In this document: positions 44,784 to 49,733 of the stretch, piece by piece | Layout of the letters: each line of letters opens with the position of its first letter | Numbering within the stretch: position 1 is the stretch's first letter | Assembly: GCF_037042905.1 (NCBI RefSeq) | Contig: NC_087245.1 | Coordinates: forward strand, 20,336,001 to 20,400,000 | Source: Lytechinus pictus | Lineage: Eukaryota | DNA length: 64,000 nucleotides | Reading direction: 5' to 3' | Program-made: the position numbers and the translations under genes | The notes under the pieces: generated by a model | What the model was told of the DNA's origin: nothing | Database searches by the model: none | Seen by the model: the letters and a program-made list of their open reading frames with translations, nothing else

Positions 44784-45070
44784 CTACAATTCATCATGAA
44801 CTTCATACTGATCCCTAGACCACCAATCCTTCAAATTGGCAACTGCTGACCAGTCGACGACCTTCCACCAGTCTGCGATGTGACTATCCCGTTTGTTCTG
44901 ATGCTTCAGGTAGTACGCATGTTCCCAAACATCAAGCACTAGGATTGGTTGATGGCCATCTAAGATTGGGGTGTCCTGATTGGCTGTCGTTGAGATGATA
45001 AGACGAGCAAGTTCTTCCGCATTGTCTCCATAAAATGATGAGGGGTTGCGCTGGCTAAGCCAGACATAAC
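44784..45070 (-). CDS. Fe/Mn SOD exon 4, ends in HDEL-stop
   Basis: TTGTAG| acceptor; GYVWL...TTANQDTP...LVLDVWEHAYY (Fe/Mn SOD signature with Asp and His ligands)...YEVHDEL*. Confidence 0.95.
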
Positions 45071-45754
45071 CTACAAAATGCAAATAATCATAGGGGATGG
45101 TCAGTCAAATCTTTTAAAACCACATCAGTAGGCTTAATACTATAATCAATAACATATTCTCAGGCATTCAGCAAGGCATATTCTGAATACCGGTATGATT
45201 TAACCCTGAAATTCGACTCATAAAATCTAGTTCTCTCATAAAAGCTTAGTGATCTAATATAGATTGTTGAGGTACAGGAAACAATAGTAGTATAATACAA
45301 TGATCAGTATCAGGATCTACTAATTCACCACTCTGTGTTTTATTCATCTTACCGCCAATTTTTTTAATTGCTTGAATGGATGCCGATTGAACTAAAAAGG
45401 TTATTGAAGGAGCAGTTGGAACTCGTTCTCATTAATGAGCACAAAGTCATTTCATTACAATGTTGATTTGTGTTGTTGAAAGTTGTTTCTACTCCTGAAA
45501 AAAATGTATAAACATACCTTGAACATACCTTGAAGTGCCACACTTCCATCTTCACGTAGGTAGATATTAGTGTGGCAGGGTTTGGGGGGCTTTGTAGCCC
45601 ATTAATAACCCATGACTATGGGTGGGGTTGTTTGTGGTTAAGCTAAAGTTCTATAAAACATCAGCCAGAAGTTATGTTAACAGTCTCTGTCTTGAGCTGG
45701 TGCTGATGTATGGTATTGGTTTAAATTTTCTTTCAGAAGTTTGTTTAAACTTAC

Positions 45755-45918
45755 CGGATCCAAACAGTGTAAGAGCTTGACTGGTGAACTGATTCTTGAA
45801 TTCTTGGAAGCTTCCAAATGTTGCATTTATCTCACTTAGCAGATCTCCAGAGGGCATGGGGATGTCATTGTCCCTGTTGGCGGCCATCGTTGACCAGTAA
45901 ATGTTGTGATTCACGAAC
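45755..45918 (-). CDS. Fe/Mn SOD exon 3 (164 bp)
   Basis: TTGCAG| acceptor; FVNHNIYWSTM...EINATFGSFQEFKNQFTSQALTLFGS(G) with the second His ligand; G|GTAAGT donor (phase 1). Confidence 0.92.
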
Positions 45919-46662
45919 CTGCAAACGATAAAATTAATGAGTATTGATCAGCATCATAATACGCATAAGAATCATGTTCTACCTTTTGTTGTAGCACCAC
46001 TGGTGTTGTAATGCCTGACCCCACCTAGCATCAGGTATTTGAGAAGATTGCGCTTTGCTCAATGAACTTTGTTTTAATAAAATCAAAGTCATATAACTTG
46101 AGTTTATTTTAAGTGGTGGCAGCGGTGGGATAGCCCATCATAATGACTGGAAGGCACTCCATATTACAATAGCAGGGGTGTATGTGACCAATTCAGAGAT
46201 GCCAAATTCAGATACCAAAATTACATGACATTTTTCACAGGAAACCATGGGCAAATAGACTGAGATGATATATAGAAAAACGAGAAATGAGATGGGTGGG
46301 GGGGGGGGGAATAAGGAGCCATTCTATGGAGACTTATGCCTTATGAGTCTCTGCATGATATGAGTCAGCAAACATGCTGACTCATGCCTTTGTCAGCATG
46401 TTAGCTGACCAAGTGGTGTTTGTCTGTTCTCGTACTTAATAGATTTTTTAACCTTACTGTTACATAAACATTATCTTAATTCTAAGTTATTTTATTAATT
46501 CAAAATTCAAATTTTCTATTTAATATAGCTGCGACCAGTATCATTTTCATAAAATATGCCCTATTTATTGTGAACCAGCAAAACTATATATAATTCATTA
46601 TCAATTCATCATGATCATCATCATTGTTACCATTACCATCACCATCATGATCATCATTATGA

Positions 46663-47344
46663 TAGGGTGTCTGAAGCCACACTGAAAAGTGTCAGCATAA
46701 AACAGGCTGATTTAGGGGAAAATATGGCACATTTTTTCGGGGAAGTTCAGGCTACTAGAAAAATGTGATCTGAATTGATTATTATCTTGTGTTTGGCATG
46801 TATGGAAAGAGAAAATTCAGGGGCTTCTTTTGACAGTAAGGACAAGTTTATATGATCATTTTAAATAAGGATTTAGAGATAAATTGCAAACCCTTATTTT
46901 TGTGTGTGTTGAGATTGCCATTTCTCCATGCGTTTTCTATGGGAAAATGAAGTTTCTGTTTTGCACAATTTTTTTCACTTTGTCGCAATTTTTCATTGTG
47001 ATCTGGTTTCCAAATCTTTATAAAAATTGTACCATCAGATAGAGCATAAAAAATCCTATTGGACTCTTTATGGACAAGTTTATGGCATTAATAATGAATT
47101 TATAACAGCTCTCGGAAGCTAAAAATTTGGATTTGTGTGTGTCCATTTCTTAACTACACAGTCTATGGCAGAGAAATGCTGAAAATTTACCTAATTTCAT
47201 TCTTCTTTTTTGCAGCCAATAATTGGATATTTTTCAAAAATGTTACATTTCTGTCAGTCTGAAGGTCATTTCTCTTCAAATTCACAAAGAAAATGTGATA
47301 TTTTCTTGAAATAAGAAAAATAATTTTTTTCTCCAGACACCCTA
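46663..47344. mobile_element. TAGGG-terminated non-autonomous DNA transposon in SOD intron 2, inside a (CAT)n tract
   Basis: TAGGGTGTCTGAAG ... CTCCAGACACCCTA (13/14 inverted match); ATTATGA directly repeated on both flanks. Confidence 0.8.
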
Positions 47345-47416
47345 ATTATGATCATCATCATCATCATCATTATTCTCATCACCATCAATTTAGATTATGA
47401 TCTACATAATTGAACC

Positions 47417-47615
47417 CAGGGACAGATCCAGGATGTTCCAAAAATTAACCAAAAAGAAATTTCGTCCACAAAAAAGTTTGACAATTAAGCAAAATAATAG
47501 AAAAAAGGTCTTCATTTTCAAAAGGGGGGGGGGCACACTTCTGTTTTAACAGCATTTTTACATTACAAACATTACACGAGCCGGCTTTGCCCCCCCCCCC
47601 TTGGATCCGCCAGTG
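47417..47615. mobile_element. hAT-type MITE (poly-G/C family)
   Basis: CAGGGACAGATCCAGG ... CTTGGATCCGCCAGTG; 8-bp TSD ATTGAACC. Confidence 0.85.
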
Positions 47616-47749
47616 ATTGAACCCTAATGAACAACTCACTCCTAGATAGGTTTGAACAATTTTTTCTGTTCTGTCTTTTTATTCACCGAAGCGGTTAGAG
47701 CTGAATAAAAACAAGACATGATATTTAGTGATAAGTAGGTTTAACTTAC

Positions 47750-47850
47750 CCACCACCATTGTTTCTAATGTTGCGTTGATATTTGGGAGGAATGTCATCC
47801 AGATGCTTCAACAGGTTGAGAATGGATGTTGCTACATAGCTGTCTGGCTC
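47750..47850 (-). CDS. Fe/Mn SOD exon 2 (101 bp, not in the ORF track)
   Basis: TATTAG| acceptor; EPDSYVATSILNLLKHLDDIPPKYQRNIRNNGG(G); GG|GTAAG donor (phase 2). Confidence 0.9.
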
Positions 47851-48224
47851 CTAATATTTAAAGAACATTTGAAACAAATAAATTCTTTCAAATACATGTA
47901 GATCTGTCCTGGGTTTATAAAGATGGGAATCCAGTATTAATATTAGGCCTAATTAAGTTAACCTTGACTAAACCTTTAAAGGGGAACCCCATCTAGTTAA
48001 AAAAAAATTATTTCCAGACTTGGGTAGATAGATCATTCTAAAAACTGCAACTGTGCAGTCATGATTGATAACTGCATCTGTGGAATACTATAGTAGTAGT
48101 AAAAGCAAAATACAGATATTTTTCATTTCCCCCAAATAAGCTATATACACTCATAGGCCCATACGCACGAATTAAAACTCTCTACACGAGACTCTCTGTT
48201 ATTTATTGAGATTGTTGTATTCAC

Positions 48225-48485
48225 CTCAGTTCTCCACAGTTGTAATGCTGCATTGAGTTTGCGTGTGTAGCCTGCGTGGTGGCCGCGATGGTGCACTTTC
48301 AAAGTTGCACTGTCGATGTAAGGTTCTAAATCTTCGTAATCAAAAGGCAAATCTGGCAAATCATACTCTGATCTCATTTCTGCAATACACTCAAATGGAT
48401 AAGAAATGCAATAACAGCTTGAGCACATATATAAAATGAAGAAAACTGCCAACATTTTGCTTTCTACGTAGCAAGCAGACGCCAT
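48225..48485 (-). CDS. Fe/Mn superoxide dismutase (secretory/ER type), exon 1
   Basis: In-frame ATGs at 48530, 48485 (best Kozak context, acaATGg) and 48455; hydrophobic MLAVFFILYMCSSCYC, then YDLPDLPFDYEDLEPYIDSATLKVHHRGHHAGYTRKLNAAL (Sod_Fe_N motif, first His ligand); GAG|GTGAAT donor. Confidence 0.9.
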
Positions 48486-49733
48486 TGTGTTGAATGAAAG
48501 TGCAAAAATTGCATGTTTTCTTCCACGCATAGGTCAACATGCACAAAACTGCTGTATTGATAACAAGTGAAATCCGAATTAGATTGGGGCAGGTTTTCTT
48601 GGAAAAAAAATCTTACCAAAGCGTAAATTAAATATGCCCCCTGGAAGTCAATCATCTGCTTGTACCTTTATTGTTGCTTGAAAAATATAGTTTCATTTGT
48701 ATAAATTTTGTATAAATGAAGAAAATAAGCGAAATGATAGATCGAGGGAGGACTTTCTGCTGTTTGTGTATTTATGTTTGTAAATAAAACCGCCTATATA
48801 GCCAGGATAGGGGCGGTAAGTATACGCGAGGGGGGGGGGGGTGCAGGGAGGGTTTTAAAAAAAAAATCAGAAAAAGGCATTCATTTAGTGGTATAAAATG
48901 CATCTTGGTCAGATCAGATTCGATAGCAAAATATTTAGCCACAGAGTTGCAAAACGGGGTCTCGATGGGTATAGCGTTGAAGATGAGAAGTTTTTCTGAA
49001 ACATTGACCTGCTCTAATTCATTTCATAGTTTCATTTTTCTTAGATTATTAAACTCGATTTACGAAGAAAAGAGCTAAAAATGGGAAAGGGGTGATGCTC
49101 GGAGAGGAATCTTTCCTTTTCTATACTGACACACGAAACACGCGTGAACCTCTGTGATTTGTTTTAAAAAAATACCTGATTAGAAAAATTTCATAAATCA
49201 TAAATATTTATAAATAAATATTCAAAATTTCAAATCGATGGGGCAAAATAAGACATGGGATTGATGTGCCGCGATATGGAAAAAAGTTTCATCGTATATA
49301 CTATATATATTTATATACATATATATACCTACAGTTTTGCCGGTATATAGCACAGCCGGGGATTTCATGTATGTCACTTTGAGCAGATACTTGCCCAATA
49401 TTGCTTGCTTAAAAAGCGGAAGAAATAGCACATTGGGACTCGAATGCGGTAGTGTTTCAAAGCTTCGACCAGAAGAGCAGAAATTTTGTGTCGATACAAT
49501 TAAAAAGATACTTTTTATGATAATTTACACCAATGTAATGTATGTAGAAAATTGAGTGTGGAAAACAAAGGGAAAGGCAAAGTTAGGCCTACTGATTTTC
49601 CTGCACAGAGCGCGAAAGAAAATTTTGTTTGAAGAGAGAGAAGAATGTCTCATTTAGGTTTATATTCTTTTGAAAAAAGAGAAGGAAAAACACTAAAGCT
49701 GTACCCTTCTTCCCCTTTCAGAAGGGGTGCAAA

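What the first reader, a model, noticed from the sequence alone, without database searches (positions are those of the whole stretch)
44784..48530. Fe/Mn superoxide dismutase with signal peptide and C-terminal HDEL: a candidate ER-lumenal MnSOD
Seen: a four-exon, frame-consistent CDS (270 aa from ATG 48485) with all four metal ligands (VHHRGHH, NHNIYW, DVWEH). Its N-terminus has a hydrophobic core (MLAVFFILYMCSSCYC) instead of an Arg-rich mitochondrial presequence, there is an N-A-T glycosylation sequon, and the protein ends exactly in HDEL-stop. Established: animal Fe/Mn SODs are normally mitochondrial (SOD2) or, in some crustaceans, cytosolic; secretory-pathway SODs are Cu/Zn (SOD3); KDEL/HDEL retrieves soluble proteins to the ER. 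Inference: this is a second, ER-resident Mn-family SOD that removes superoxide, or supplies H2O2, in the ER lumen, a compartment with no recognised SOD in animals. I am not aware of this class being characterised, but I cannot search the literature.
Basis: partly seen in the sequence, partly recalled or inferred. Interest (0 to 1): 0.88.

Follow-up and report, generated by a model that had tools for sequence, protein, structure and literature searches.

The report
Sea urchin SOD2X, ER-type MnSOD
This is a real, expressed sea-urchin gene for a manganese superoxide dismutase with a secretion signal and an HDEL ER-retention tail, but this class (SOD2X) was already described in 2022, so the find is correct but not new.

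Summary
Four minus-strand exons with GT..AG borders join into an 813-nt CDS (270 aa from ATG 48485) with all four metal ligands, a hydrophobic N-terminus, one N-A-T sequon and HDEL-stop. Contigs from four public runs carry all three splice joints and the last exon with its stop codon. With the in-frame upstream ATG 48530, the protein is 100% identical to the RefSeq Lytechinus pictus 'superoxide dismutase [Mn]-like' protein (285 aa).

The ER-lumenal reading is well supported by sequence. In my tree the gene sits in a starred metazoan clade of 44 proteins, from sponges to amphioxus and a lungfish. Of these, 39 have an N-terminal hydrophobic signal and 32 end in [HKR][DE]EL (37 with near variants). 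A separate ordinary SOD2 lies on contig C4.

The novelty claim fails. Hewitt & Degnan 2022 (PMC9524095) named this clade SOD2X, 'a novel endoplasmic reticulum MnSOD'. They list the S. purpuratus orthologue SPU_021817, which starts MASACYV, ends HDEL and has a DeepLoc ER score of 0.90. A holothurian orthologue was expressed and shown to be active in 2019 (PMC6410416).

ER residence has not been shown experimentally. The published main text never mentions the HDEL motif. The scan also noted this stretch once before (s1-313842).

The parts
48225..48485 (-). Exon 1 CDS from the strong-context ATG 48485 (acaATGg): signal peptide, short PY-type linker and first half of the Sod_Fe_N hairpin, including ligand H65 (48293-48291)
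   Evidence: The S. purpuratus SPU_021817 and Diadema proteins also start MASA. Contigs cover 48224-48412/48449.
48486..48530 (-). Optional in-frame 15-codon N-terminal extension from the weak-context ATG 48530 (cctATGc), preceded by TGA at 48536; used in the RefSeq 285-aa model
   Evidence: No laid contig covers it. One probable RNA run holds about a third of the sampled words of 48440-48640; I could not lay it.
48408..48485 (-). Predicted cleavable signal peptide (26 aa: n-region with K10, a 16-residue hydrophobic core, C at -3 and -1)
   Evidence: Kyte-Doolittle mean of 2.61 over 11 residues. AF2 models it as a single helix that is not part of the globular SOD fold. Published SignalP and DeepLoc calls exist for orthologues. 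No signal-peptide predictor was run here.
47750..47850 (-). Exon 2 (hairpin loop with the SOD2X-specific insertion, up to the GGG motif)
45755..45918 (-). Exon 3: ligand H125 (45908-45906), N-A-T sequon (N152, 45827-45825), start of Sod_Fe_C
44784..45070 (-). Exon 4: Mn-type Gln207 (ANQD), ligands D222 and H226 (DVWEH), WW-rich C-terminal helix, HDEL (44798-44787), TAG stop (44786-44784)
   Evidence: The tail has pLDDT <50, so it is probably flexible.
44300..44783 (-). 3' UTR, continuous with exon 4 in the run contigs (it extends beyond 44300)
   Evidence: table 8 (records 7, 13, 19)
46663..47345 (.). Young interspersed repeat with terminal inverted repeats inside intron 2 (not part of the gene product)

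Best explanation
This is the Lytechinus pictus orthologue of SOD2X, the second animal Fe/Mn-family SOD clade. Shown here: the exon structure, expression, the Mn-type active site, membership of the clade, and conservation of the N-terminal hydrophobic signal and the C-terminal [HKR][DE]EL. Inferred: the nascent chain enters the ER through Sec61 by way of a cleavable signal peptide (cleavage predicted after Cys26 of the 270-aa form). It then folds as a bacterial-type MnSOD dimer, takes up Mn2+ in the secretory pathway, and is returned from the cis-Golgi by the KDEL receptor, which binds the flexible HDEL tail. There it dismutates superoxide to H2O2 and O2 in the ER lumen. My odds: about 0.97 that it is SOD2X, about 0.9 that it is an active MnSOD, and about 0.75 that its steady-state location is the ER lumen. 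Its physiological role (protection, or feeding H2O2 to ER peroxidases for disulfide formation) is unknown.
For: Gene model and splice joints. Identity: 100% match to RefSeq XP_054760519.2 of L. pictus. Clade: a 44-row metazoan clade with SH-aLRT 98; the window pairs with L. variegatus (99), then Diadema (98), then holothurians and hemichordates; the own-genome SOD2 falls outside. Targeting features: 39 of 44 have a hydrophobic N-terminus, 32 of 44 a strict [HKR][DE]EL and 37 of 44 a loose match; most exceptions are visibly truncated or extended models. Mn type: a GGG motif with no N-domain Gln, Gln207 in ANQD, and best solved relatives all MnSODs (1gv3 at 177 bits, 2rcv at 176 bits, against about 119 bits for human SOD2). 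Model: pLDDT 88, HDEL tail <50. Literature: the SOD2X clade and DeepLoc ER 0.90 for SPU_021817; the recombinant Paelopatides orthologue is an active dimer and SignalP finds a signal peptide. Separate SOD2 on C4, with an Arg-rich pre-sequence segment and no HDEL.
Against: No member of the clade has been localised experimentally. DeepLoc also gave the S. purpuratus protein an extracellular score of 0.56. The 2022 paper predicts extracellular or lysosomal locations for some members and in its conclusions calls the clade 'predominantly extracellular'. The start codon is unresolved: the 285-aa form puts 15 basic, acid-free residues ahead of the signal, which could change targeting. A few orthologues lack a terminal HDEL (Lingula, Mytilus with four extra residues). 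I could run no signal-peptide predictor.
Confidence: 0.8

Rival explanations
1. It is mainly a secreted or lysosomal MnSOD. The HDEL only slows export or acts in some tissues, so the enzyme works outside the ER (extracellular fluid, egg or cortical granule contents, lysosome).
For: For the S. purpuratus orthologue DeepLoc gives extracellular 0.56 and lysosome 0.47 beside ER 0.90. Other clade members are predicted extracellular or lysosomal. The 2022 paper's conclusions call SOD2X 'predominantly extracellular'. Some orthologues end in variants (HDEF, HGEL, KNEL) or lack the motif.
Against: 32 of 44 clade members, from sponges to a lungfish, end exactly in [HKR][DE]EL, and the linker before it varies freely. 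That pattern is expected if the last four residues are under selection as a retrieval signal, and it is hard to explain for a purely secreted enzyme.
Confidence: 0.15
2. Translation starts at ATG 48530. The longer N-terminus makes a signal-anchored (membrane-tethered) or dually targeted protein rather than a soluble lumenal one.
For: RefSeq models for L. pictus and L. variegatus use this ATG, and the 15 residues are identical in both species. The extension is basic and free of acidic residues. The closest solved structure (1gv3) is the catalytic part of a membrane-bound cyanobacterial MnSOD.
Against: ATG 48530 has a weak context (C at -3, C at +4), while ATG 48485 has A at -3 and G at +4. The S. 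purpuratus and Diadema proteins start at the MASA position. A retrieval tail would be superfluous on a membrane-anchored ER protein. Automatic annotation simply takes the longest ORF.
Confidence: 0.04
3. The protein has lost dismutase activity and serves another role, such as metal binding or a chaperone function.
For: Relative to bacterial MnSODs it has clade-specific insertions in the hairpin loop and after the GSGYVWL strand.
Against: All four ligands, the Mn-type Gln and the DVWEHAYY signature are invariant or nearly invariant across the clade. The Paelopatides orthologue is catalytically active.
Confidence: 0.01

Closest known systems
SOD2X clade of metazoan MnSODs (Hewitt & Degnan 2022, PMC9524095; Sod2X in PMC11721785), e.g. 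S. purpuratus SPU_021817
   Same: Same domain pair. Same N-terminal start (MASACYV...), signal peptide and HDEL end. The window protein sits in the same clade, next to other echinoids. There is a paralogous mitochondrial SOD2 elsewhere in the genome.
   Different: Nothing substantive: this is the L. pictus orthologue. What I add is the explicit count of the [HKR][DE]EL tail, which the paper's main text never mentions, plus members from hemichordates and a lungfish, lineages that the 2024 survey lists as having lost the gene.
Ps-Mn-SOD of the hadal sea cucumber Paelopatides sp. (PMC6410416; UniRef A0A411L1L4)
   Same: An echinoderm orthologue in the same clade (49% identity to the near-identical L. 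variegatus protein P0283), with a SignalP signal peptide, the same ligands and the DVWEHAYY signature. The recombinant enzyme is an active dimer.
   Different: It ends in HEEL, not HDEL. It was studied as a cold- and pressure-adapted enzyme expressed without its signal peptide. Its cellular location was not addressed.
Mitochondrial SOD2 (own-genome copy on contig C4; human SOD2 structures such as 1n0j)
   Same: Same Fe/Mn SOD fold, ligands and Mn-type Gln.
   Different: SOD2 has an Arg-rich presequence, no signal peptide and no HDEL, and the motifs GGGHINH and QGSGWGWL. It is much less similar (about 119 against 177 bits for the PDB relatives) and lies outside the SOD2X clade.
Bacterial dimeric MnSODs (Anabaena membrane-bound MnSOD 1gv3, B. 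subtilis SodA 2rcv)
   Same: Closest solved sequences and folds (about 40% identity, TM 0.91-0.93 normalised to the target).
   Different: They have no eukaryotic ER signal or retrieval tail. SOD2X also has an inserted hairpin loop, GSGYVWL in place of GSGWAWL, an insertion after that strand and a WW-containing C-terminal helix.
Extracellular Cu/Zn SOD3
   Same: A SOD that enters the secretory pathway through a signal peptide.
   Different: Unrelated fold and metals. It is secreted and matrix-bound, with no ER-retrieval motif.

Membership tests
Fe/Mn superoxide dismutase (Pfam PF00081 + PF02777) | Both domains above the gathering score | tested here: met
   Sod_Fe_N 55.8 bits (cut-off 27); Sod_Fe_C 78.4 and 26.9 bits (cut-off 20.9), scored exon by exon
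Fe/Mn superoxide dismutase (Pfam PF00081 + PF02777) | Four metal ligands (His, His, Asp, His) in the conserved motifs | tested here: met
   H65, H125, D222, H226; invariant columns in alignments A1 and A2
Mn-specific subtype | Outer-sphere Gln supplied by the C-terminal domain (NQD) and a GGG motif without Gln in the N-terminal domain | tested here: met
   Q207 in ANQD and NNGGGFVNH; the best PDB relatives are MnSODs
Mn-specific subtype | Mn-dependent catalytic activity | not testable with these tools
   Only indirect: the recombinant Paelopatides orthologue is active
SOD2X clade | Phylogenetic placement inside the metazoan clade, separate from SOD2 | tested here: met
   44-row clade with SH-aLRT 98; window with L. 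variegatus 99, with Diadema 98; own SOD2 outside. This was a quick search only, and SOD2 is represented by a single long branch.
SOD2X clade | N-terminal signal peptide instead of a mitochondrial presequence | tested here: inconclusive
   A hydrophobic core with KD 2.61 over 11 residues, small residues at -3 and -1, and only one Arg before the domain. No SignalP or TargetP was available. Published predictions for orthologues are positive. The start codon is not fixed by RNA.
Soluble ER-resident KDEL-receptor cargo | [KH]DEL-type tetrapeptide at the extreme C-terminus | tested here: met
   HDEL then TAG, present in the transcript; 32 of 44 relatives strict, 37 of 44 loose
Soluble ER-resident KDEL-receptor cargo | No membrane anchor in the mature protein; accessible tail | tested here: met
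   The AF2 model has only the N-terminal helix outside the globular SOD fold, and the last four residues have pLDDT <50. This is a prediction, not a measurement.
Soluble ER-resident KDEL-receptor cargo | ER localisation that depends on the tetrapeptide | not testable with these tools
   I found no experimental localisation of any SOD2X member in the literature searches

The most novel reading that the evidence does not exclude
HDEL-type retrieval is the ancestral and near-universal state of the whole SOD2X clade, from sponges to amphioxus and a lungfish. If so, the ER lumen of most marine animals holds a dedicated, bacterial-type dimeric MnSOD that was lost in tetrapods, teleosts, insects and nematodes. 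The literature predicts ER location from DeepLoc alone, never mentions the motif in its main text, and wavers between 'ER' and 'predominantly extracellular'. A demonstration of ER residence and of a role in lumenal superoxide/H2O2 handling would therefore still be new.
Probability: 0.65. Interest if true: 0.45.

Novelty: already known. Interest (0 to 1): 0.2.

Why it matters
The standard model animals have no recognised SOD in the ER lumen, although oxidative protein folding and ER-associated oxidases produce reactive oxygen there. The SOD2X clade shows that many animals probably do have one, and the sea urchin is a workable system in which to test this. That idea has been in print since 2022. 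The present finding confirms a published computational prediction in one more species and sharpens it with the conservation of the HDEL tail. It does not open a new question.

Tried and rejected
1. A profile search with ten SOD2X proteins was swamped by bacterial SODs because of the 8000-candidate limit. It returned only about nine clade members. A single-sequence search with the Tegillarca protein worked better.

2. The laid contigs did not reach the start codons. Coverage stops at 48412 in organism A and 48449 in organism B. A second run search showed that one probable RNA run holds about a third of the sampled words of 48440-48640.

3. An exact look-up of the 270-aa form among called genes found nothing.

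4. I tested N-glycosylation sequons as evidence of lumenal exposure. The N-x-S/T at the N152 position is kept in echinoids and holothurians with different middle residues. Only 11 of 31 clade members have a sequon in that segment, and bacterial SODs also carry chance sequons. This is weak evidence and I do not rely on it.

5. A paper that mentions both HDEL and MnSOD (PMC5447177) turned out to be unrelated.

6. No signal-peptide or localisation predictor is available here. I used hydrophobicity, the -3/-1 rule and published predictions for orthologues.

7. I did not run a complex prediction for the dimer, because the report does not rest on it.
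Full report
**Observation.** On the minus strand, four exons (48485-48225, 47850-47750, 45918-45755, 45070-44784) each have GT..AG borders. Joined, they give 813 nt, which is 270 codons plus TAG. Pfam scores exon 1 as Sod_Fe_N (E 6e-15) and exons 3 and 4 as Sod_Fe_C (E 5e-6 and 4.5e-22). 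The four ligands are H65, H125, D222 and H226. The Mn-type Gln207 sits in ANQD, and N152 starts the single N-A-T sequon. HDEL occupies 44798-44787, directly before the stop.

**Expression and exon borders.** Contigs of four public runs from three studies were laid on 44300-48900. They show joints that, within the stated 1-2 base ambiguity, are exactly the three introns. Depth is continuous through the stop codon into at least 480 nt of 3' UTR. One 1771-nt contig from a related species spans 48449 to 44382 with all three joints. The last exon and the HDEL end are therefore transcribed as predicted.

**The 5' end is not resolved.**
- Laid contigs stop at 48412 and 48449, inside the hydrophobic segment but short of any ATG.
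- One probable RNA run holds about a third of the sampled words of 48440-48640, but I could not lay it.
- There are three in-frame ATGs: 48530 (weak context, directly after a TGA at 48536), 48485 (A at -3, G at +4) and 48455.
- The S. purpuratus and Diadema orthologues start at the MASA position, which corresponds to 48485. RefSeq uses 48530.
- All three choices keep the hydrophobic core.

**Identity.** The 285-aa reading is 100% identical to RefSeq XP_054760519.2 and two further accessions, 'superoxide dismutase [Mn]-like' of Lytechinus pictus. It differs at 10 positions from the L. variegatus protein. The window is therefore L. pictus, and the gene is already annotated with this structure.

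**A second Fe/Mn SOD locus.** The genome has exactly one other Fe/Mn SOD locus, on contig C4. Its exons encode an ordinary SOD2. It has an Arg-rich presequence segment, GGGHINH, QGSGWGWL and CANQDPL, and no HDEL. It matches S. purpuratus SPU_024657 closely.

**Relatives.** An exhaustive search with exon 4 and two word-index searches returned proteins with the same architecture from many groups:
- Echinoderms: echinoids, holothurians and an ophiuroid.
- Other deuterostomes: two hemichordates, amphioxus and a lungfish.
- Protostomes: bivalves, a gastropod, a chiton, annelids, a nemertean, a brachiopod, a millipede and a scorpion.
- Early-branching animals: cnidarians and three sponges.

**Tree.** In a maximum-likelihood tree of 62 rows, 44 of them form one clade with SH-aLRT 98, and its internal order broadly follows animal phylogeny. 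The window pairs with L. variegatus (99), then Diadema (98), then holothurians plus hemichordates. The own-genome SOD2 falls among the bacterial rows on a long branch. This was a quick search and SOD2 is represented by one sequence, so only the membership of the window protein should be taken from it. The origin of the clade should not.

**Targeting features across the clade.**
- 39 of 44 members have an 11-residue stretch with mean Kyte-Doolittle value of at least 2.0 before the catalytic domain.
- 32 of 44 end in strict [HKR][DE]EL: 21 HDEL, 4 HEEL, 3 KDEL and 4 RDEL.
- Five more end in HDEF, HGEL, KNEL or QEEL.
- Of the seven members with no such tail, three are visibly truncated or over-extended models; the others are the two Mytilus proteins, where four residues follow HDEL, Lingula P0296 and the unnamed P0302.
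- The linker between the last helix and the tetrapeptide varies freely in length and sequence while the tetrapeptide is kept. That is the signature of a retrieval signal under selection.

**Enzyme type.** The closest solved sequences are bacterial dimeric MnSODs: Anabaena 1gv3 at 177 bits and B. subtilis 2rcv at 176 bits. Human SOD2 scores about 119 bits. An AlphaFold2 model of the near-identical L. variegatus protein has mean pLDDT 88 and pTM 0.83, and its best Foldseek matches are the same bacterial MnSODs (TM 0.91-0.93 by target). The N-terminal segment forms one helix outside the globular SOD fold, and the last four residues have pLDDT below 50. This agrees with the scan's other note on this stretch (s1-313842). 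Relative to bacterial MnSODs, the clade-specific features are:
- an insertion in the hairpin loop;
- GSGYVWL in place of GSGWAWL;
- an insertion after that strand;
- a WW-containing C-terminal helix;
- a short PY-type linker after the signal peptide.

**Mechanism.** The following steps are shown: a transcribed gene, an intact Mn-type active site, a hydrophobic N-terminus, a terminal HDEL, and conservation of all of these. The following steps are inferred from established cell biology of signal peptides and of the KDEL receptor (ERD2): co-translational entry into the ER, cleavage after Cys26, dimer formation, Mn loading in the secretory pathway, retrieval from the cis-Golgi through HDEL, and dismutation of lumenal superoxide to H2O2 and O2. 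What the enzyme is for, whether protection or supply of H2O2 to ER peroxidases, is open.

**Comparison with the literature.**
[quoted passage not shown] It is a clade with 99% support, and 10 of its 18 members are predicted to be in the ER by DeepLoc-2.0.
- Their supplement lists S. purpuratus SPU_021817, which starts MASACYV and ends HDEL, as 'Endoplasmic reticulum, signal peptide' with an ER score of 0.90. The second urchin MnSOD is listed as mitochondrial.
- A 2024 survey (PMC11721785) adopts Sod2X as the signal-peptide clade.
- Li et al. 2019 (PMC6410416) cloned the Paelopatides orthologue, found a signal peptide with SignalP, and showed that the recombinant dimer is active.
- None of these localises the protein experimentally. 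The main text of the 2022 paper never mentions KDEL or HDEL, and its conclusions call the clade 'predominantly extracellular'.

**Verdict.** The ER-lumenal reading is the best-supported one, at about 0.75 for steady-state ER residence. The class is already described and the gene is already annotated, so novelty is 'already known' and interest is low. The modest additions here are:
- the explicit count of the retrieval motif across phyla;
- RNA support for the L. pictus exon structure;
- members in hemichordates and a lungfish, lineages that the 2024 survey listed as having lost the gene.

Noticed in passing
window 46663-47345 (intron 2 of the SOD gene): A repeat of about 685 bp with terminal inverted repeats (TAGGGTGTCTGGAG ... 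CTTCAGACACCCTA). The genome holds at least 549 candidate copies, and the 40 that were scored are 97-99% identical. In the run contigs its depth is 400-2800, against 10-40 for the SOD exons. It looks like a young, transcribed MITE-like element.
   Followed up: partly
window 47500-47620: A second repetitive patch in intron 2, bounded by G and C homopolymers. Many contig breaks, loose ends and false 'joints' pile up here, which suggests another dispersed repeat.
   Followed up: no
P0007 (Protopterus annectens XP_043931185.1), P0284 and P0290 (hemichordates): A lungfish and two hemichordates carry full SOD2X proteins with a signal peptide and HDEL or HEEL, encoded on chromosome-scale contigs. The 2024 survey (PMC11721785) lists Sod2X as lost in vertebrates and hemichordates.
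   Followed up: partly
P0005, P0271 (Branchiostoma): Amphioxus SOD2X models carry an extra Cys-rich segment of 85-135 residues between the signal peptide and the SOD domain. A 252-aa variant (P0270) lacks it. This may be alternative splicing or fusion with a neighbouring exon.
   Followed up: no
P0151 (metagenome, 530 aa) and P0109 (298 aa, ends QEEL): These are probably non-animal secretory Fe/Mn SODs. One is a tandem double SOD with a signal peptide and a C-terminal hydrophobic anchor. The other has a signal peptide and a -EEL end, and sits next to the animal clade with weak support (71).
   Followed up: no
window 30029-30934 (-): A single 301-aa ORF with an acidic/basic N-terminus followed by WD40-like repeats. 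A similar WD-like ORF at 15536-15925 is interrupted by the masked run of 206 N.
   Followed up: no
G000 C4:10589365-10593288 (+), L008: The ordinary mitochondrial SOD2 gene of this genome. I located four coding exons. Exon 1, which holds the start codon, I did not look for.
   Followed up: partly
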